From: Ylistrum balloti
Taxonomy: Eukaryota
Length of the DNA: 64,000 nt
Direction: 5' to 3'
Assembly: GCF_031769215.1 (NCBI RefSeq)
Contig: NW_026782312.1
Coordinates: forward strand, 1 to 64,000
The position numbers and the translations under genes are program-made. This document shows positions 32,194 to 44,600 of this stretch, in pieces. Positions within the stretch are counted from its first letter, which is position 1. Every line of letters begins with the position of its first letter. Below the pieces are notes generated by a model. That model was not told where the DNA came from and made no database searches. It was given only the letters and a program-made list of their open reading frames with translations.

Positions 32194-35100
32194 ATGACGG
32201 ACACTAATTCTGACACGAGCTCACTACCTGAAGCACGCGATGCTAAAGACAACATGCTGTATGAACTTCCGGTCGACCGAGGATGGGCTTGGGTCATTCT
32301 AGTTGGTATGTAATTTTATATCAAATCTGTATTGACGCTCGAGTTTTGCTCTCTAAAAAATCTATATGAATGTGAGGGTTTACCTCTCTAAAAAATCTGT
32401 ATGCGATATACTAACAAATATCAACGTATAGCATTGCCAATGTATATACTGAACAAGAATACAGATTCATAAGGTTCTAAATCAATAACATTGCAAGTCT
32501 ACTAGAGTCTAGTTACAAAATCTAGTTACCAAGATATATCATATTGATCTAAATAAAAGAAATGATATTTTGGTCGACCGCACTTCAGAAGAATTATAAA
32601 ATAAATCGTATATTTTAGTCCAATTATTTTTTCACGTGATACCAGTTAACGTAATGTCCAATTCAAACTTTCCATGTGGCCCTGGTTAACTTTATGTCAA
32701 ATACAAACATTTGATATTGTTCCGGTTACATATGTGGAATTTAATTTTTTCACTCGGCTCTGGTTATCGTTTATCATAACAAATACTACTTATACATCAC
32801 AAAAGTCGTTTGATAATTAGCTAACTATTTTGCTTTTGATTGTATCATCGACTAAACGAACGAAATCACTTTGGTGTTGCTGGTATACATTTCGTTGATA
32901 CCTTGGTTTGCCGTTACCTGTATACCCCATTTTAATTCATTCGAATATTGGCACAGTCCAGATTACACACGTGTACTTGATTATTGCTTTAAAATCGAAT
33001 ATATAAGAATTAGGAAATTTATTGAATTATGGAGTTAGTGCAACATTCCATCTGGATGTTGACATTTTCTTCCAATCACTTTGGATTTCTTCAGTCGCCT
33101 CCTACCTTAAAAATTTAGGCCCTAAGCATCACTGACGAGTCCTAGAAGGACGCAACAGTTGCATGATGTAGCATCACTGACGAGTCCTAGAAGGACGCAA
33201 CAGTTGTATGATGTAAAACTACTGCCGAGTCCTAGAAGGACGAAACAGTTGTATGATGTAACACCACTGCCGAGTCCTAGAAGGACGCAACAGTTGTATG
33301 ATGTAACACTACTGCCGAGTCTTAGAAGGACGAAACGGTTGTATGATGTAACATCACTGACGAGTCCTAGAAGGACGAAACAGTTGTATGATGTAACATC
33401 ACTGACGAGTCCTAGGAGGACGAAACAGTTGTATAATGTAACATCACTGACGAGTCCTAGGAGGACGAAACTGTTGTATGATGCATCACTGACGAGTCCT
33501 AAGAGGACAAAACAGCTGTATGATGTAGTTTAATTCTTTGGTTGACTCTACTATATCTAACTCTTTTGTATTAAAGACGCAATTTAATTATGTAATCTTA
33601 GACTTATCTTGTAACCGTATCATTATAAACACTATAGATGTGTATTTTAATTGATAAAAGTTTTGTCCAAAAAGAAGTACTGATATTTTCAGCACAAAAA
33701 GAATATTTAATTAATATAACATTATTCAATAGATCACATTTTATAGCCGAACTTTATTGTACTCAATCCAGTTCAATGTGGTAACGGAAAAGATGATAGT
33801 GAAGGAAAATTGGACAACTAGGTTAAGACTGATGGAAGTAATAAAGTTACAAGATAAAAAGGCTAAGGTGCAAGTCTGTTGACGAAAGATGCAACAAAAC
33901 ACTTTATTGTATTGTTGATTGGTATTATTTCATAATTTGAAATAAGTGATAACGAATTATATTGGTGACACGTGTTTTAGCCAGTACCCTCATCACCACG
34001 CTATACGCTGGGATTTTCAAGAGTTTTGGACTATTCTACGTAGAAATCTTGGATGTCTACAGCAGCAATGTATCTACTACATCATTAATATCATCTCTAC
34101 AGTTCGCCGTCTACTGTGTCACAAGTATGTAGATTTGGTTGCATTTGTGTTTTTTACGAAGTCACAATACCTAAAGGAGACGGGTGATTGAGACCATAAG
34201 TTCTACTACAAAGCTCAACACAGTTAAGCTGTTCTTCATCAAGTCAGGTTTAATTCTTTGACTTTCACGAGTTTGTGAAACTAAATTCCCTAGATAGTGG
34301 TTCGGTGTTTTCTTTCCTGAATTGAGAAAATTCAAATTGCATTTAATCGAGATATTGAAATTTTGAAATATTTAGAATATTGACTGAGAACTTTCCCTTA
34401 ATTGACTAAAATAGAATTGTCCACGGTGAAAGTGAGAGTATCATCTCGTTATTCTTTCTGTCGTGACTGTTTATCTGCACGGTGAGCCTATCAAAGCATT
34501 GTTTTCTTGAAGGACTATACAAAAACTCACCGGAGAATATCATATTTCGATACAAATATCTTGTAACATAAAGCGGTTCAATAAATTACACACTCATCTC
34601 TATCGCTAGGCGCCTAAAGTAATAAAACCTACCTTAAAGTCAAAAATGGTCATTAATCTTAAAATAAAAACCCGGAAAACAAAAAAGCAAAAAAAAGCCA
34701 AACAAAAATACCGGGAATTTCAATATTAAAATCCTTGTTGTACATTGCTACAATATTTTGGGGTCGTAATCCGGGATTCGACATCACGACACCCTTAACA
34801 AATAGTATGAGATGACAATTTAATGTCATTTCCTCATATATATTTTTAGGCCTGTTAATGGCTGATGACTGTGAATTGGTTGAGATCTATATTCGAACCA
34901 TTAAGAGAGATATACATTGTATCCATGTAAAAACAACTTTATTCGCCGACAAGTTAATCGTTTTATTTTGTTATTAATAGCAATTTTCCTTTTTCGTCGT
35001 TAATGGCATTTGATTTTAGTAAATTTTCACTGTTTTTCCAGCTGTTCCAGTCATGACGTCATTGACACGGCGTTCCAGTATCCGTTGCTGTCAGCTGGCT

Positions 35101-38100
35101 GGTATCCTGATAACGGCTATTGGATTTGGACTGAGCTCATTGGTCCACAGCCTGGACCTGCTCATTCTTACCCAGAGTATTCTTAGTGGTATGTGACATA
35201 ATTGTTACACCTAAGCACATGTTATGTAAATCAGCCCCAACTACAAAATATACACATTTTCAGATGTGACAATCATATAATACCAGTTGTGTGTTCAATA
35301 TAGTTACAGGTTGTTACTGGAATTATTACCTCCACGCTATTTTATTCTTAGGAGATGGTCAGAAATAAGCACACAGGCAACTTGATTACAGCCATAAGAG
35401 AAAGGAAAAGAAAACCTAAAGTCACTATTAAGTATATTAACTTTCTTATTGTTCTTCAAGCCTGTCGCGAACTTAATTTGTCATGCTTTTACCCACTTTT
35501 AGACCTTGTTAAAAGAAACTTCTCAGTCAAAAGATTATTCTTTGTTAACTTAGAAATTCTTGTAGTAATTAAAACTTTGATTTATCTAACGACCATTTAA
35601 CGAATAGTCCATCCTGTGCCTGCTCTTCTGGATATGAAACTGTTTCCCATTACTTTCTTGAATGTCTTATGTATAATAATCATAGACTCTTTCTGTTTAC
35701 GTCTGTTAATATTTATAGATACTATAACCATATTGATACAAACATCTTTCTACAATGTCCTGACTGTAACGGAAATACAAACAGAATGTTACTAAATGAT
35801 GTTCAATTATTTATTGGTTAAACCCGCTTCATATCTGATAAATTTAATTTCAATCACTTACGGAGAGAACTTCCATGGGCTCCGATCCTATTGACTCAAT
35901 CTGTATTACATTTTATGTCAGTAAAATATGTTCGAATGAAATGAAAATGAAATAAAACTTATAAATATATGGAACCCTTGAACCATTTTTGTTTGTACAC
36001 GAGGCAAGTAAATAGCACCGTTTACTACAAATTAAGAGTTAGATACAGTAGAACCAAACTGCATCACACAGCTGTGCTTTCTTCTAGGACTCGTCATTCA
36101 TGATTAAGGCCTTTGAATGCTAGCAGGCGACTGAAATAATTCAAAGTGGTAAAAAAAAGTCCTAATTTGGACATGGAGATGCACTAACTCCATAATCAAA
36201 TAATTTTCGTAATTTTCATATAACAGATAATGTGTCAAAAGAATGTACATGTTCTGAACCGTGGCACTATTTGATGTATGATGTGGAATCCAGTTTACAA
36301 TATTGATGATTCCTTTAACAAACATGTGAGAGTAAGTTCATGAAAGCGTTTGTCCGAAATTACAAAGAAAGTATATTGGTCGCATGTCTTTTTCAACGAG
36401 ATGTAGTATTTTCTAGAATTACCATGATTTCTGAATTCTAAACAGCTTATAATTCTGAGGTAATTTATCACTGCCTTTTGGAAAGGTATCGGTTTTGGCT
36501 CATGCCATACAAATTTTGTTGCTTTTTTCATCTCCATTTATAGTTAATATACTGTTGAATTTATTGATGTCAAATGATTTTCACTTATAATTCACAATTG
36601 TTTTTAAAGAATGTACTTATAGAATAAAACATGCTGAAGATATTTATGAATTGGTGGAAATCATGAATCATTTCCTGTAGGATAACAACATTGATAATAC
36701 TGACATGTTTACAGAAATATTATCCATACCTGAAATCGACGAATCTAAGGCAAAATATGAACGAAAGAAATTTAGCTTAGAAGACATTGATTATAAACCA
36801 CGTGTACAGCTAGTTCAATGAAAAAGGGAACTGCTATAAAATATGCAGAACTTCTTTGCATTGTATTGTTAATATTGTGTCATTATGTATCAATTTATTT
36901 TTACAGGACTAGGCATGGCTCTGGTTTACCCCACGGCTATCGTCTTAATCGGAAAGTACTTTCGAGGGCGTCTTGGATTAGCAAACGGTGTCTTGATGTC
37001 TGGTTATGCTTTAGGGGGCGTCACCCTGCCTCCTCTATTGCGGTATATTTTGGATGAGTATAGATTAGAGGGTGCCCTGTTGTTGACAGCGGGGATTATA
37101 ATCAATTGTCTTCCCCCAGCCTGCTTGCTGCGACCATTTGAGTTTTACACAGAACGAAACTCGGGATCAACGAACAAACTGGAAGGAAATCATGTAAAGA
37201 TTGATAGTAAACATGAGAACATGTTGACGAACAGTTGTGCATTTAAAGATTGTCGAAACAAGGACCAATCGTCGGCACTGTTGTCTGGTTATAATCCAGA
37301 CACCACCCTTGCGAGTGCGTCGGCTCCAAATCTTTCCTCATCTAGACACGTAACCAATGGAGTAGTCACTTCCGGTAAAAATGGAAGCGATAGTCAAATC
37401 GATAGTATTCTTACAAAAGGCAATGCAGAGTATTTAGAACCATGCATTTTTGGATATCTAAGTACAGGAGAGTTTACAAATCTATCACAGGAAACTGTAA
37501 GAAAGATGTCAAAAGACAATGATTCTTCAAAATCAGTTCATGATTCGTCTCTGATTAAACGTTTGTTTAATAAATGTAAATCTTGGCAAATGTGCAGCCC
37601 GATTTTATGGAGAAATAAGCTTTTCCTTTTGCTTATTCCAATATATTGTTTCGCAAGTGTTGGATCAGAAACATGTCATCTCTTTTCACCATCTTTTGCT
37701 AAGGACAGGGGAATATCGAGCTCCAAGATCGCGACACTGGTATCCATACAGAGTATGTGTGACTTTGTTGGTAAGTTAATCTACCCAAATAGTTAGCTAT
37801 TGAAACTTACACAGGAAAAGAAACAGCTTATGTGATAATGATAAATCAACTGATCGTTTCACCTTAATTGTATTCAGTGTTTGGATTGTCTGGTGGGCAT
37901 TGTTTTCAGTTCAAAGATCTATTAAGAGAAACCACTCAGAAATTATTTATATATTATAGACTATAGAATATCTGTTCACGTACAGGTAATATATGTAGTT
38001 GGTCGAACTTGACTGATCAGTACTACGCAAACACCCTGCTGACCAGCCAAACTGTTGTACTAGGTTGAAGATGTCCCTGTGCAGACCCATTCTGCGCGTG

Positions 38101-39914
38101 CTATAGGTTATTGGTTTTTTACATAACCTTCAGCTGAGCACGTGTTACAATAAGATGACTGACATCATTAACAGAAATACATCTCTGTTTCAGGACGTGT
38201 CTTAAGTGGCTATATTGCAGATCTACCCCGGATTAAACGACAACAGATAGTAATGATTTCGCAAGTGATAGCAGGTCTAATAATGCAGCTGACGCCATTG
38301 TTCCATACCTTCTGGTCTCTTGTTCTTTTCTCAGCTGGCTACGGTCTTACGGCGGGTATCATATTTGCATTGTTTCCACCTATCCTCTCTTCTTCCGTTG
38401 GTCAAGACATGTTCCCAACAAGCGTGGCAGTAATGATTCTGATAAAAGGATCCTTTGTGGGTGGACTGATTCCTTTTCTTGGTAAGTAAATCTAACTGTA
38501 ACATTGATTTTCAAATGGCTCTAATTTTCGAGGCTTTACCAAAATATCTTATGAAAGAGGGAAGTATTTATCTCGACTGCATTTCCTTAATTTTTAATGG
38601 ATCTATTTTTCCGCGATTTTATACCGTTCTTGAAAATAGTAAAAATTGGAATCCCTCAAAAATTACATCATTTACAGTACAAGTGCTAGCCATTATATGA
38701 GTTATGGGAATATAATGACAAAATCTTGTTATAATCCATGTTTTGTTGTTTTGTTAGTTACGCACTATAAAAACCATTTTGTTACTTATACATTATGTAA
38801 ATCATTTGTTTTTTATTTCCATTCTGTACTTACCGAATTTACCAACGATAGCGTGGCGTTATTTATTACACTGCAAGATTATATGACGAGTCTAATGTGA
38901 GGTACCAAGCAGCTGATTGTTGTGTTTTCTATTTCTGTTGCGATGCTCTTCTATTCTTAACGTTTTTGATGCTACAATACTTTAACATGCATAAGAGGTG
39001 ATAACATACTACTCTAACAGGGTGTTGTTGGTACTTCACGTGTGATGTTAATTTGGTATTAAAAATTCATTAAGAGTGTGTTGTGTATGTATACTACACT
39101 AAATGTGTGTATTCAATGCAACTCCTTTTCGACTTTTTACGTTTTTTTATTCATTACTATTTCATTGACTTGTATTCGCTATTCTTGACACTTTTGAATA
39201 ATACATGATGATTTAAACGTTACTTCTACTAATATTGAAACTTTTGAGTATTGGATGATAATTTCCACACTACTCGTACTAATATTGACACATTTTGATA
39301 ATAGATGATAGTTTCCATACTCCTTGTAACAATCTTGACACATTTAAATGATATATGATATTTTCCACACTGCTTGTACTAATATTGACAATTTTGAATA
39401 ATAGATGATAATTTCCATACTGCTTTTAACAATCTTGACATTTTGATTAATAGGAAATAATTTCCACATTACTTGTTCTAATATTGACATATTTGAATAA
39501 TAGATGATGTTTTTCCTATCGTTGGTACCTACCATGACACATTCAGATAATAGATGATAATTTCCATACTATTTCTAACATGCTTGACACAATTAGATCA
39601 TAGATGATAATTTCCATACTGTTTGTAACATGCTTGACACATTTAGATAATAGATGATAATTTCCATACTGTTTATAAAGAACTTGCCTTGATTATTTCT
39701 CTGTGCTGGTATCTCTCGTTGTTTTCCTTGCTGATATTAACGTATTATTAATCTTATTCCAGGTTATCTCCGAGACAGTACAAACGAATTCCACGCGACC
39801 TTCCACTTCATGGGAGCAACATCATTGATAGCGTCCTTGTTATTGCTACTATTTGATAGAATTGCTGTAAAGCATCACGAGGGCGCCATTTCAGTTGAAA
39901 TAAGTGGAGATTAA
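32194..39914 (+). CDS. Monocarboxylate transporter (SLC16/MCT family, MFS), paralogue 1, 568 aa, 6 coding exons
   Basis: Exons 32194-32305, 33981-34124, 35042-35188, 36907-37770, 38194-38481 and 39763-39914 join in frame (1707 nt). The motifs PVDRGWAWVIL, YAGIFKSFGLFY, IGKYFRGRLGLANG, LLRP, CDFVGR and GYLRD are SLC16 hallmarks. Confidence 0.93.
33127..33525 (+). ncRNA. Tandem array of nine 45-nt minimal hammerhead ribozyme units; units 6-8 have an intact catalytic core
   Basis: Unit: CATCA (stem I) CTGACGA (core C3-A9) GTCC-TAGAA-GGAC (stem II) GAAA C-AGTT-G TA (short stem III, GUA cleavage triplet) TGATG (stem I') TAA. Units start at 33127, 33172, 33217, 33262, 33307, 33352, 33397, 33442, 33484. 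Confidence 0.9.
36055..36180 (-). mobile_element. Decayed single copy of the hammerhead-bearing element (antisense, MCT1 intron 3)
   Basis: The minus strand reads TTTCAGTCGCC...GGCCTTAATCATGA-ATGACGAGTCCTAGAAGAAAGC-ACAGCTGT-GTGATGCAGTTT. Confidence 0.7.
39230..39675. repeat. Degenerate 50-bp minisatellite (about 9 copies) in MCT1 intron 5
   Basis: GATAATTTCCATACT... recurs at 39556, 39606, 39656, with more diverged copies upstream. Confidence 0.85.
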
Positions 39915-41694: not shown

Positions 41695-44600
41695 ATGTCC
41701 GAGACACTAGAATCAGAGGAGGAGTTCCGCTTCTTGGCTGATCAGTCGAATCCCACTGTGGATGAACGTGGCGATGTCCCAATCGACCATGGTTGGGCTT
41801 GGGTTGTTCTAGCCGGTAGGTACATAAATTGCCTTACCTTATACAATATAGTATATTATTCTACGTGTGTTAACGGCTTGATAAACCACTGCCCTTTTTT
41901 ATTAATAGACATGGAACAATTTTATTATTTGTTCATTGCCGTGGTAACCTAATTGATATGATGAAAACATTTATGTTACTTTAACAAAACATATTCAACA
42001 TAAATAAGAAAAAACATTGATAACTTTTTTAAATCGAGACTGCAAACGACAATTGTTAATATCAAAGCTCAAAATATTTTAGTAAATGATATTTTATCAA
42101 TAAGTTTTTTTCGGATATTTATGGTATAAGAAAACCTCTATAGTTTTTTAATTGATACTACTGACGTAACACATTAAAATGCATCAGTGTTACGTAATGT
42201 TCAGACCTTGTCCTGCTGACACTGTCAATGAGATGTGATAGTCTAGCGCAATATGGACCTTGCACTATCCTATATAGAACTTGTGTTATCATTACTATTG
42301 ACAAGACAAAAAGCAGGTTTTTAACGCGTACATATGTACTTACACATTATCCAGACTGTTGTACGATCGCTAATAATTCCAATGCACTAGGTTACTAAAT
42401 ATAGCCTGTCAAATTGCTTCATATATGCCAAGTCAGTCCAAACAGTGACCATGAATACATATTGTATACAATATATTGTGCATACATATACTTGAAGGTA
42501 GCAATGCTATAGACGCTTTATGAAAGTCTGTAACGGTTAATAATACATTATTATGCAGTGTTCATGTCCTGACATTTAAATGATACGGCGCTTGATATAA
42601 TCGTAACGCCTTCAGTGAACACTATTTTTGTACCTTTTTAATGAATGACTCGTATTTCTAATAAAACAAAACTCTTGTAACGTTCTTGAATCTGAGTGAC
42701 AGATAAAGTACCTCTTCGTTATAATTTGAATTCTCTATGAGTATATTTCAAACTCTTTTGTAGTGTTTATAATGTTACATAGCGGTGGTTCTTCGTGATC
42801 ATTGACTTAAGTGATCTGGGTACATCTTGTGATCGCCATTTTGTTGGTTGTGTCCGTGCCTCTGTTAGAGCCTGAAGTACATATCATGTTTGCATCAAAA
42901 CTGATGATGAAGTGATATTCAGGATGGTCGGTTGGCACGGTGGTAACGAACTCGCCTTTCACCTAAGTGTTCAGGGTTCGATTCCCGGAATTGCCGTGGA
43001 AAGGCATGGAGTCGCCAGCCCGACCATGTAGGTTCCATTGGTACTCCTGGTTTCTCCTACAATAAAACCCCTCGAACATTGTTATAAAATAAATTGATAA
43101 AGTTTAAACTGTTGACGTGACCGTTATTAAAAGAAAAAGAACTCTTAATTTCGGTAGAAAAGATTATACAGGTTGACTGTAGTATCTGTGATGTACCTTT
43201 TCCTATTTTAGCTAGCATAGTTATCAATGTGTTATACGCTGGAGTATTGAAGTCGTTTGGGATCTTCTTCATCGAGATACTGGATGTTTACGGCGGTGCA
43301 GTCTCGACAACCTCCCTCATATCTGGACTTCAGTTCACCGTATACTGCACAGCAAGTAAGCATTTCCTCTGGAACATTGAATTTATAACATGTGTCTTGT
43401 CTTCCTGGTTTTTGTTGGTGTTCGTCTTCTGTTAAGATACTGAAATACACTCAATGATTTATTTTCATACTTTTCTGTCGCTTATTGTAATTAACATACC
43501 CACATTTAATGTGTGCACTCATCCCTACTACTGCGTGTTTAATTAACAATATCCCTGTAGCTGAATGTTTCATTACAGTACCGGTCGTGTCCATGTATAT
43601 ATCCGAATTGATGTCTCTTTCACTAAGCCTGCTAACGTTTGTTCATTCATTCTGTCCTTCTCTGCAGTAGGACGAAATCGCAGTGTGGGTTGTCTACAGT
43701 GCATGATCGATAAAGACAACTAACTTTGATACTAATGTATATACATTCGTCACATTTATCATTTGCTACCCTGCAGGAGCCAAAGAAATACACATGTATT
43801 CTGTCCCAAGAGGCGACCAATTCTGATGTCCACAGATCTTTCTCGTGTATAAAGAAGGCATTACAGGTGCTAGAATTAATCTATCTACTTTCCGAATGTA
43901 GCAGTTTGGATCTTTTCTTTTTTTCTCAGTGTACTTTCTCTGTCTTAGTTTGTGTCTACCTAGACTAGTAGACATAACCAAATAATGTAGAAGGTTGGTA
44001 CTGTCATATAGTAGCACAAATACTTAATGTACCTGTATAACACTAGACACTCAATGAAATGTTCAAGATGAATCAGAAGGAATATGATGCCATTGTTTTA
44101 CAGAATGTCACTTCTATGAAGTGACACTATCAGATGAGTTCCCTGTTTTACAACTCAATAAATCAATCGATATAAGACCTAAAGCGCAAAATGTTTTAAC
44201 AAAATATACTCAGCATATTAAATATGATTATTTCACGACCAGATGTGCCCGTACTTATGATCCTGTTACGGTACCAGAGCGTGCGCACCTGTCAGCTGAT
44301 CGGTATTACCTTCAGTTCCTTGGCGTACGCCCTCAGCAGTTTGACCACACGGCTGGATCTCCTTATTCTTTGCCAGAGCCTTCTAAATGGTGAGACTCTG
44401 TTATATGTTTGTATAAAGAGAAATTCTACTCAATTTTCAAAACGATAATATTTTCAATTACTGTAAAATGAAGGCATTTGACATTGTATAGAAAAAAAAT
44501 ATGATAATAAAACTACATATCTTTAACTCTCGCCCGTTACTAGTGACTGATATACAAGTGCTTACGTCCACTAAAACTTCTTTAAGAATAAAAGGAGTAT

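What the first reader, a model, noticed from the sequence alone, without database searches (positions are those of the whole stretch)
33127..33525. A minisatellite made entirely of hammerhead ribozymes: nine head-to-tail 45-nt units
Seen: each 45-bp unit contains, in the correct order, the invariant hammerhead core CUGANGA...GAAA...NUH, a 4-bp stem II (GUCC/GGAC), a 5-bp stem I (CAUCA/UGAUG) and a minimal stem III with the self-complementary segment ACAGUUGU (ACAGCUGU in unit 9). Units 6 (33352), 7 (33397) and 8 (33442) have an unmutated core. Established: minimal type I hammerheads with palindromic stem III occur in Penelope-like elements, in metazoan non-LTR retrozymes and in newt, schistosome and cricket satellites, where monomers are to my knowledge hundreds of nt and cleavage is helped by dimerisation. 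Inference: here the repeat unit is reduced to the ribozyme alone, which I do not recognise as a described configuration. It may be a minimal self-processing satellite.
Basis: partly seen in the sequence, partly recalled or inferred. Interest (0 to 1): 0.92.

Follow-up and report, generated by a model that had tools for sequence, protein, structure and literature searches.

The report
Decaying 45-bp hammerhead ribozyme minisatellite
Nine head-to-tail 45-base copies of a minimal self-cutting hammerhead RNA motif really are here, but they are an expanded, partly dead internal module of a common ~400-base mobile repeat sitting in a transporter-gene intron, and they evolve like ordinary satellite DNA, not like a working ribozyme.

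Summary
Window 33127-33527 holds 9.0 tandem 45-bp units, each a complete minimal type I hammerhead motif. Units 6-8 keep every invariant core nucleotide.

The array is not a free-standing satellite. It is the expanded ribozyme module of a dispersed composite element of roughly 32815-33610, whose usual form carries one hammerhead. That form resembles non-LTR retrozymes and PLE-associated repeats.

The exact core 25-mer occurs 3,918 times in this 648-Mb genome. Across 646 sampled units the catalytic core is no better conserved than loops. Broken helix pairs outnumber compensated ones 12 to 1, and large arrays of catalytically dead units exist. Growth is therefore at the DNA level.

The window copy is a weak one. 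Six of nine cores are dead, and its ACAGUUGU helix III makes the active fold a minority state.

One point stays unexplained. Array units are about three times less diverged than their own flanks.

No RNA data exist, so cleavage is untested.

The scan reported this family at least eight times on other DNA of this genome. A 2026 preprint lists retrozyme families with consensus lengths down to 51 bp. I rate it a new variant of a known kind, of modest interest.

The parts
32815..33126 (+). 5' arm of the composite (retrozyme-like) element. The part from about 32905 is clearly homologous to other copies. 32815-32904 aligns weakly and includes a degenerate copy of the 3'-tail motif.
   Evidence: Genome search with 32870-33131 gave 1636 first-look candidates. 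The 40 scored matches are 72-78% identical and start at query position about 36. Local alignment to the extended consensus spans 32815-33126. Flanks are homologous between array loci.
33127..33527 (+). 45-bp minisatellite of nine units, each a minimal type I hammerhead motif.
   Evidence: TRF, pattern scan 9 hits against 0 expected, Rfam Hammerhead_1 sub-threshold hits, unit table.
33127..33351 (+). Units 1-5, all with inactivating core changes: A13C in units 1, 2 and 4; A6C in units 3, 4 and 5; U16.1C in unit 1. Neighbouring units share these mutations.
33352..33396 (+). Unit 6, the only fully canonical unit. Predicted cleavage is 3' of A17 at 33388.
   Evidence: Rfam RF00163 33.2 bits, E 2.8e-06. 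Core and helices are intact.
33397..33483 (+). Units 7 and 8, with intact cores. Unit 7 has a stem I mismatch (UAAUG). Unit 8 is 42 nt with helix III ACUGUUGU. Predicted cleavage sites are 3' of 33433 and 33478.
33484..33527 (+). Unit 9, which carries G12A (GACAAAAC). It is the only unit here with the family-consensus palindrome ACAGCUGU.
33528..33610 (+). 3' tail of the element. It is degenerate here. The family consensus ends in a motif like TGTGTGTCTTTTGTACAATCTT, after which loci diverge.
   Evidence: Downstream alignment of 17 loci. The tail consensus and 29.6% divergence for this copy are.
32194..32305 (+). Exon 1 of the host MFS/monocarboxylate-transporter-like gene. It runs from the ATG to ...PVDRGWAWVILV, with a GTATGT donor at 32306.
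   Evidence: Translations and splice-site inspection.
32306..33980 (+). Intron 1 of that gene. It contains the whole element in the sense orientation.
   Evidence: Donor at 32306, and the acceptor TTTTAG ends at 33980. Exon 2 (33981 to about 34126) and an exon within 35023-35193 match the paralogue's N-terminal exons. The large exon 36885-37796 is MFS_1, E 1.1e-11.

Best explanation
The array is a DNA-level minisatellite expansion of the single hammerhead module of an old, dispersed, non-coding element of about 400 bp. That element has a 5' arm, a minimal type I hammerhead and a tail of about 95 bp. It resembles metazoan non-LTR retrozymes and PLE-associated repeats. This copy was inserted, sense-oriented, into intron 1 of a transporter gene.

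Shown:
- The composite architecture of the element.
- The prevalence of single-hammerhead copies.
- Occasional head-to-tail tandems of the whole element.
- Genome-wide abundance.
- Absence of any ribozyme-specific constraint.
- Fixation of dead cores in large arrays.
- More diverged units at array edges.
- Higher-order periodicity.

Inferred:
- The element was originally spread by retrotransposition.
- The 45-bp arrays grow, shrink and homogenise by unequal exchange or slippage.

If the intron is transcribed, adjacent intact units could pair their self-complementary helix III segments. This gives the classical double-hammerhead, which is the same thing as a junction-spanning type III hammerhead, and it would cut after GUA every 45 nt. 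In this copy only units 6-8 qualify. The C-to-U change in helix III makes the active fold a minority state. Any cleavage is expected to be slow and of no consequence for the host gene.
For: - Architecture: flanks are homologous across array loci over about 230 bp upstream and about 95 bp downstream, at 68-88% identity.
- Copy form: of 29 loci found with the 5' arm alone, 13 have exactly one hammerhead, usually followed about 90-100 bp later by the tail motif. Six have none detectable and the rest have 2-19.
- Whole-element tandems: hammerhead spacing is 395 bp in L040, and the tail motif lies upstream of the 5' arm in L035, L040, L047, L050 and L036.
- Abundance: the exact 25-nt core occurs 2010 + 1908 times against 0 for the reversed control.
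- No functional constraint: divergence is 7.3% in the core, 6.5% at N7, 6.2% in loop 2 and 5.7-6.9% in the stems. There are 566 broken, 186 one-sided and 47 compensated pairs. G12, A13 and A6 are among the most variable sites, and C25/G26 show CpG decay.
- Dead arrays: L018 has 48 units, nearly all G12A. L017 has 49 units, nearly all A13G. L011, L007 and L020 are also dead.
- Satellite behaviour: edge units are 11-12% diverged against 6.9% for inner units. Pairwise divergence rises with lag. Perfect cores recur every 180 bp on C19.
- Folding: the family-consensus junction folds as the type III hammerhead at the MFE (-17.5 kcal/mol, P 0.46). Window junctions give P 0.04, 0.013 and 0.0014.
Against: - Array units are about three times less diverged than their own flanks. 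Units are 5.7% diverged and array consensus 1.7%, against 19.9% for arms and 22.7% for tails in 14 copies. Single hammerheads decay like their arms, at 20.0% against 15.2%. Simple neutral intra-array turnover does not predict this. It needs exchange between arrays, homology-biased turnover, or some renewal process.
- Variants at unit sites 33 (C/T) and 45 (A/G) are intermixed within most of the 34 arrays. This hints that arrays either moved as arrays or exchange sequence.
- The link to an autonomous PLE is not established. The sampled PLEs of this genome carry a different minimal hammerhead, CUGAAGA...GAAAGCGCUA.
- Neither expression nor cleavage could be tested.
Confidence: 0.78

Rival explanations
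1. This is a working self-processing satellite. Transcripts of these arrays cut themselves into 45-nt monomers through the junction or double-hammerhead fold, and those RNAs, linear or circular, have a role for the element or for the host.
For: - The family consensus junction adopts the hammerhead fold at the MFE.
- Some arrays are fully intact, such as L008 with 14 of 14 units.
- Family copies pass the Rfam gathering scores for both type I and type III.
- Array units are better conserved than their flanks.
Against: - Conservation is uniform over the unit. Catalytic residues are not spared, and helices break 12 times more often than they are compensated.
- Only 31% of 646 units keep both core and helices, and 50% keep the core.
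- Large dead arrays persist.
- The motif has no loop-loop tertiary contacts. Published minimal PLE hammerheads cleave poorly even as dimers (PMC4209133).
- No RNA evidence exists.
Confidence: 0.1
2. Arrays are made or renewed through RNA. Self-cleaved 45-nt units are circularised and copied by rolling-circle reverse transcription, or multimeric cDNA converts resident copies. This would keep arrays close to the family consensus while their flanks decay.
For: - Array consensus is only 1.7% from the family consensus, while arms are about 20% diverged.
- The same two polymorphisms are mixed inside most arrays.
- Retrozymes are proposed to move via circular RNA (PMC7229834).
Against: - Arrays always sit exactly between the same arm and tail.
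- Dead-core variants are homogenised across 47-49 units, which a cleavage-dependent route cannot do.
- Edge-unit decay, lag-dependent divergence and a 180-bp higher-order period are signatures of unequal exchange.
- Only 2 of 250 multi-variant unit haplotypes are shared between loci.
Confidence: 0.07
3. The array has been co-opted to regulate the host transporter gene by cutting its pre-mRNA inside intron 1.
For: The array lies in the sense orientation inside intron 1, 454 nt upstream of exon 2.
Against: - It is one of thousands of copies, and six of its nine units are dead.
- Its active fold is disfavoured.
- The paralogous neighbouring gene shows no such array, since the window holds only these nine core matches.
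- An earlier report on another intronic copy reached the same negative view (s1-262738).
Confidence: 0.03

Closest known systems
Metazoan non-LTR retrozymes (Cervera & de la Pena 2020, PMC7229834; Li, Clavereau & Pollet 2026 preprint, 10.64898/2026.07.22.740005)
   Same: Both are tandem, AT-rich, non-coding repeats with a type I hammerhead in each unit. The parent element here has a monomer of about 360-400 bp, sometimes in head-to-tail tandem. It is present in thousands of copies in an invertebrate genome that also holds PLEs.
   Different: The classical repeat is 150-450 bp with a canonical hammerhead that has loop-loop contacts. Here the amplified unit is the 45-nt minimal ribozyme alone, and only that module is amplified, not the whole element. 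The preprint's shortest family is 51 bp, in vertebrates, and it is not discussed further. Circular RNA was not tested here.
Minimal hammerheads of Penelope-like elements (Cervera & de la Pena 2014, PMC4209133; Lunse, Weinberg & Breaker 2017, cited but not readable here)
   Same: Both have a short helix I, no tertiary contacts, a 1-2 bp helix III with a palindromic loop suited to dimer formation, and a position about 80-100 nt from the element's 3' end. PLEs with such motifs exist in this genome.
   Different: There is no RT/GIY-YIG ORF next to this copy. The sampled PLE hammerheads have a different sequence, with AGCGCU rather than ACAGCUGU as the palindrome. PLE hammerheads are reported about 3 kb apart or as dispersed single motifs, not as 45-bp arrays.
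Ribozyme-bearing satellites and SINE-like repeats (newt satellite 2, schistosome Sm-alpha, cave-cricket pDo500)
   Same: Each is a genomic tandem or dispersed repeat that encodes a type I hammerhead. Dimer-dependent cleavage through an extended helix III (Forster et al. 1988) is the same geometry as the junction hammerhead here.
   Different: Those monomers are about 330 bp or longer and carry non-ribozyme sequence. Their transcription and cleavage have been shown experimentally.
Tandem-repeat-containing mobile elements of bivalves (internal satellite arrays carried by MITE-like or Helentron elements; from my own knowledge)
   Same: Both are dispersed elements with conserved arms and an internal array of variable copy number that behaves as a satellite.
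   Different: The internal repeats of those elements are not ribozymes.

Membership tests
Hammerhead ribozyme, type I (Rfam RF00163) | Invariant core CUGANGA ... GAAA ... UH in the correct order | tested here: met
   Units 6, 7 and 8 are complete and units 1-5 and 9 are mutated. Genome-wide, 50% of 646 sampled units are complete.
Hammerhead ribozyme, type I (Rfam RF00163) | Three helices around the core, with helix I open | tested here: met
   Helix I has 5 bp, helix II has 4 bp and helix III has 2 bp plus a tetraloop. However, the thermodynamic fold of the single unit prefers a rod that sequesters C3-G5.
Hammerhead ribozyme, type I (Rfam RF00163) | Score at or above the Rfam gathering threshold (34 bits) | tested here: not met
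   The best window unit scores 33.2 bits. Other copies of the same family do reach it, at 35.8 and 35.0 bits, and Hammerhead_3 reaches 48.9 against 48.5 across a junction.
Hammerhead ribozyme, type I (Rfam RF00163) | Site-specific Mg2+-dependent self-cleavage | not testable with these tools
   This needs in vitro transcription. No RNA run holds the stretch.
Non-LTR retrozyme | Tandem repeat with a complete hammerhead in at least two consecutive units | tested here: met
   Units 6-8 are consecutive and complete. This is the criterion used by the 2026 preprint.
Non-LTR retrozyme | Monomer of about 150-450 bp carrying a canonical hammerhead with loop-loop contacts | tested here: not met
   The unit is 45 bp and is a minimal motif without tertiary-contact loops. 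The parent element of about 360-400 bp does fit the size range. The preprint's range reaches down to 51 bp.
Non-LTR retrozyme | Expression as linear and circular monomer RNA | not testable with these tools
   Only one public run holds the stretch. It is genomic contigs, with flanks at depth about 9.
Penelope-like element (pLTR) | Adjacent RT plus GIY-YIG ORF, or sequence homology to a PLE terminus | tested here: inconclusive
   None of the 72 GIY-YIG matches lies on contig C455. Pieces of the element lie within 1.5 kb of 4 of 30 GIY-YIG loci, but beyond the ends of those PLE copies. The PLE hammerheads differ in sequence.
Satellite / minisatellite DNA | Concerted evolution: within-array similarity, diverged edge units and higher-order periodicity | tested here: met
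   Within-array pairwise divergence is 6.5%, about half of what independent decay from the consensus would give. Edge units are 11-12% diverged against 6.9% for inner units. There is a 180-bp periodicity on C19.

The most novel reading that the evidence does not exclude
The 45-bp arrays are not passive relics. They are kept near the family consensus, about 3-fold less diverged than their own flanks, by a process that passes through RNA. Junction hammerheads would release 45-nt units that are circularised and reverse-transcribed as multimers, which then convert resident arrays. That would make this the smallest known ribozyme-defined replicating unit in an animal genome.
Probability: 0.07. Interest if true: 0.85.

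Novelty: new variant of a known kind. Interest (0 to 1): 0.33.

Why it matters
This is the short extreme of ribozyme-bearing repeats. The ribozyme module of a retrozyme-like element has itself become the satellite unit, so every junction of two units spells a complete type III hammerhead.

That makes a tidy natural system for two questions. One is how satellites are born from mobile elements. The other is whether minimal hammerheads do anything in vivo.

The discrepancy between well-kept arrays and decayed flanks is a concrete, measurable puzzle in concerted evolution.

For this particular locus the practical message is that it is an ordinary, mostly dead intronic copy.

Tried and rejected
- Expression and cleavage ends. 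The look-up of sequencing runs returned a single holder that is not on record as RNA. Laying it showed genomic contigs only. Flanks are at depth about 9, contigs break at the array, and summed depth in the array is 1e4-5e5. There was no information on RNA or on copy number at this locus.
- PLE partner. I searched GIY-YIG in the genome and got 72 matches, then scanned 30 loci. Element fragments lie near 4 of them but outside the PLE copies. My first generic hammerhead scan missed the PLE hammerheads because of too strict a stem II rule. Inspection found them, and they are of another sequence type.
- Selection for catalysis or structure. Rejected on the per-position and pair counts.
- Subfamily artefact as the cause of the arm/array divergence gap. 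Rejected, because the arm consensus of array-bearing copies and of single copies is nearly identical, and the best genome match to this copy's arm is only 78%.
- Recent exchange between arrays. Only 2 of 250 multi-variant haplotypes are shared among the 34 sampled arrays. This is uninformative given the thousands of arrays in the genome.
- Taxon. The atlas search with the transporter exon gave only 'Eukaryota, various phyla'. I therefore do not assert the mollusc or bivalve label used in earlier notes.
- Literature. Lunse et al. 2017 and Arkhipova et al. 2017 are not held. No paper in the library contains the core sequence or combines hammerhead, satellite DNA and bivalve.
- The 124-aa ORF at 33159-33533 is a by-product of the in-frame 45-bp period, not a gene.
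Full report
**1. What is in the sequence**

Window 33127-33527 is a head-to-tail array of period 45 with 9.0 copies, 91% matches and TRF score 613. A hammerhead-core pattern with up to three mismatches hits nine times in register and never in 100 shuffles. Three hits are perfect.

Each unit reads: helix I strand CAUCA, core CUGACGA, helix II GUCC-UAGAA-GGAC, then GAAA. A two-base-pair helix III (A-U, C-G) is closed by AGUU. The cleavage triplet GUA follows, then helix I strand UGAUG and a UAA spacer.

- Units 6, 7 and 8 keep all invariant residues.
- Units 1, 2 and 4 have A13C, units 3-5 have A6C and unit 9 has G12A. Unit 1 has also lost U16.1.
- Unit 7 has one helix I mismatch.
- Unit 8 lacks the spacer and is 42 nt.

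Rfam's type I model scores 33.2 bits on unit 6. That is a whisker under the gathering score of 34, and nothing in the window except a tRNA passes gathering.

**2. The array belongs to a larger dispersed element**

A search of the window's own 648.5-Mb assembly with the array returned matches on dozens of contigs, from 1407 first-look candidates. They include arrays of about 5 and 8 kb on C50 and C214. The perfect 25-nt core occurs 3,918 times, against 0 for the reversed control.

The flanks of the arrays are homologous between loci. About 230 bp upstream and about 95 bp downstream match at 68-88% identity, and similarity stops after a motif like TGTGTGTCTTTTGTACAATCTT.

Searching with the window's 5' arm alone gave 1636 candidates.

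- Of 29 fetched loci, 13 carry exactly one hammerhead, usually followed about 90-100 bp later by the tail motif.
- Six carry none detectable.
- The rest carry 2-19 units.

An alignment of single-hammerhead copies shows that many begin with the same tail motif that ends the element. Whole elements sometimes lie head to tail, with hammerhead spacing of 395 bp in L040. This is the more-than-unit-length, variably 5'-truncated layout familiar from PLEs and retrozymes.

In the window the element spans about 32815-33610.

**3. Host context**

The element lies in the sense orientation inside intron 1 (32306-33980) of an MFS/monocarboxylate-transporter-like gene.

- Exon 1 is 32194-32305 and ends ...DRGWAWVILV, followed by a GTATGT donor.
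- Exon 2 starts at 33981, after a TTTTAG acceptor.
- A further exon lies within 35023-35193.
- The large exon 36885-37796 matches MFS_1.

A paralogue follows at about 43100-46000 and has no array.

**4. Can it fold and cut?**

For a single unit the active type I fold is 5 kcal/mol worse than a rod in which ACUG of the core pairs with CAGU of helix III. The probability of the active helices is about 1e-4.

Two adjacent units can instead form a complete three-way junction. Helix I closes over the spacer, and the two self-complementary helix III segments pair over 8 bp. This is the double-hammerhead of Forster et al. 1988 seen as a type III ribozyme. With the family consensus ACAGCUGU this is the MFE fold (-17.5 kcal/mol, P 0.46). 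Rfam's type III model reaches its gathering score on such a junction in locus L012, at 48.9 against 48.5.

The window copy has ACAGUUGU in eight of nine units, which gives two G-U pairs. Its junctions 5/6, 6/7 and 7/8 reach only P 0.013, 0.04 and 0.0014. The five-unit stretch 33307-33530 folds into long-range pairings between non-adjacent units (-64.7 kcal/mol, z -2.9).

Published minimal PLE hammerheads cleave poorly even as dimers (PMC4209133). Self-cleavage here is therefore possible in principle for units 6-8, but expected to be weak. It was not testable. The only public run holding the stretch is genomic contigs.

**5. How the arrays evolve**

I analysed 646 units from 34 arrays. The sample is mixed: L002-L030 were chosen by similarity to this array, and L032-L060 by the arm.

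- Half the units keep every core residue, and 31% also keep the helices.
- Divergence from the unit consensus is flat: helix I 5.7%, core 7.3%, free N7 6.5%, helix II 6.9%, loop 2 6.2%. Only two polymorphic sites stand out, C/T at 33 and A/G at 45.
- G12, A13 and A6 are among the most variable positions. C25/G26 show CpG-type decay.
- Helix pairs are broken 566 times, kept by a one-sided change 186 times, and compensated 47 times.
- Whole arrays are fixed for lethal changes. L018 has 48 units that are nearly all G12A, and L017 has 49 units that are nearly all A13G. L011, L007 and L020 are also dead.
- Edge units are more diverged (12.2% and 11.1%) than inner ones (6.9%). Pairwise divergence rises from 6.5% at lag 1-5 to 8-9% at lag 10-15.
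- One array has a perfect core every 180 bp, a four-unit higher-order repeat.
- In the window, neighbouring units share mutations: units 1-2, units 3-5 and units 7-8.

All this is the behaviour of satellite DNA that grows by unequal exchange or slippage. It is not the behaviour of a sequence selected for catalysis.

**6. An unexplained feature**

I compared 14 array-bearing copies that have complete arms.

| Part | Divergence |
|---|---|
| 5' arm, from its consensus | 19.9% |
| 3' tail, from its consensus | 22.7% |
| Array units, from the unit consensus | 5.7% |
| Array consensus, from the family consensus | 1.7% (10 of 588 sites) |

In 13 single-hammerhead copies the hammerhead is 20.0% diverged and the arms 15.2%, so it decays like its arms. 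The arm consensus of the two groups is almost the same, which rules out subfamily structure as the cause. For the window copy the values are 19.9%, 29.6%, 7.9% and 1 of 42.

Purely intra-array neutral turnover predicts that fixed differences accumulate at the flank rate, so something else is acting. Candidates are ectopic exchange among the thousands of arrays, or turnover biased towards the majority unit. The latter would act as position-blind purifying selection and fits the flat profile and the edge effect. A third candidate is renewal via cDNA.

Sites 33 and 45 are intermixed inside most arrays, which fits exchange or inheritance of already heterogeneous arrays. Sharing of rare haplotypes between the 34 sampled arrays is minimal, at 2 of 250. 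That is uninformative at this sampling depth.

**7. Relation to known systems**

Type I hammerheads in metazoan tandem repeats of 150-450 bp are the non-LTR retrozymes (PMC7229834). Minimal hammerheads with palindromic helix III mark PLE pseudo-LTRs and many dispersed fragments (PMC4209133). Reviews note minimal type I hammerheads 'in tandem' in PLEs.

A 2026 preprint derives vertebrate retrozymes from PLE pLTRs. It lists family consensus lengths from 51 to 972 bp, and it explicitly treats their tandem growth as satellite birth by unequal crossover.

This genome has canonical PLEs with a C-terminal GIY-YIG domain and a classical minimal hammerhead (CUGAAGA ... GAAAGCGCUA) about 125 nt downstream of it. 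Each element ends about 75 nt further on, often at (TA)n. The layout is the same as in our element, but the sequence differs.

I could not find the partner PLE.

I found no paper with this sequence or with a 45-bp hammerhead array. Two key papers were not readable.

**8. Verdict**

The unit is indeed 'ribozyme only'. But this locus is a decayed copy of a very abundant family that this scan has already reported at least eight times elsewhere in the genome. Two parallel notes exist on this same stretch.

My tests agree with those reports on four points: the parent element, DNA-level growth, the junction/double-hammerhead equivalence and the intronic position. I add two things. One is the quantified lack of ribozyme-specific constraint. 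The other is the arm-versus-array divergence gap.

The finding is a new variant at the short extreme of a known kind. Interest is modest unless RNA work shows processing.

Noticed in passing
window 48351-48422 (-): A tRNA gene, the only Rfam match in the window above gathering (60.4 bits).
   Followed up: no
window 32194-38486 and about 43100-45991 (+): Two tandem paralogous MFS/monocarboxylate-transporter-like genes with the same exon layout. Their large exons are 33-35% identical. Only the first carries the hammerhead element in intron 1.
   Followed up: partly
window 16478-17809 (+): Fragments of an LTR-retrotransposon pol gene (RT-RNase H, integrase zinc-binding and core domains), in a GC-richer stretch at 14-18 kb.
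   Followed up: no
window 51405-52637 (+): A 410-aa ORF with a RING finger and B-box domains (TRIM-like), next to a GC-rich, strongly C-skewed stretch at 54-58 kb.
   Followed up: no
L064, L078, L080-L082, L085-L087 (oriented coordinates about 1880-1960): A young PLE family, 95-99% identical between copies, with a C-terminal GIY-YIG domain. It carries a classical minimal hammerhead (CUGAAGA ... GAAAGCGCUA) about 125 nt after that domain and ends about 75 nt later, often next to (TA)n. Inverted 5'-truncated partial copies lie alongside.
   Followed up: partly
G000:C422:240415-261997 and C129:50248-67783: GIY-YIG matches inside 755-aa open frames. They recur every 5.26-5.36 kb on C422, which suggests tandem, possibly intact PLE copies.
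   Followed up: no
G000:C19:1174706-1175810 (-): Perfect hammerhead cores recur every 180 bp. This is a four-unit higher-order repeat within a 45-bp array.
   Followed up: no
34 arrays in L001-L059, unit sites 33 and 45: Two polymorphisms, C/T in the helix III palindrome and A/G in the spacer, are intermixed within most arrays at different loci. Rare multi-variant haplotypes are almost never shared between loci.
   Followed up: partly
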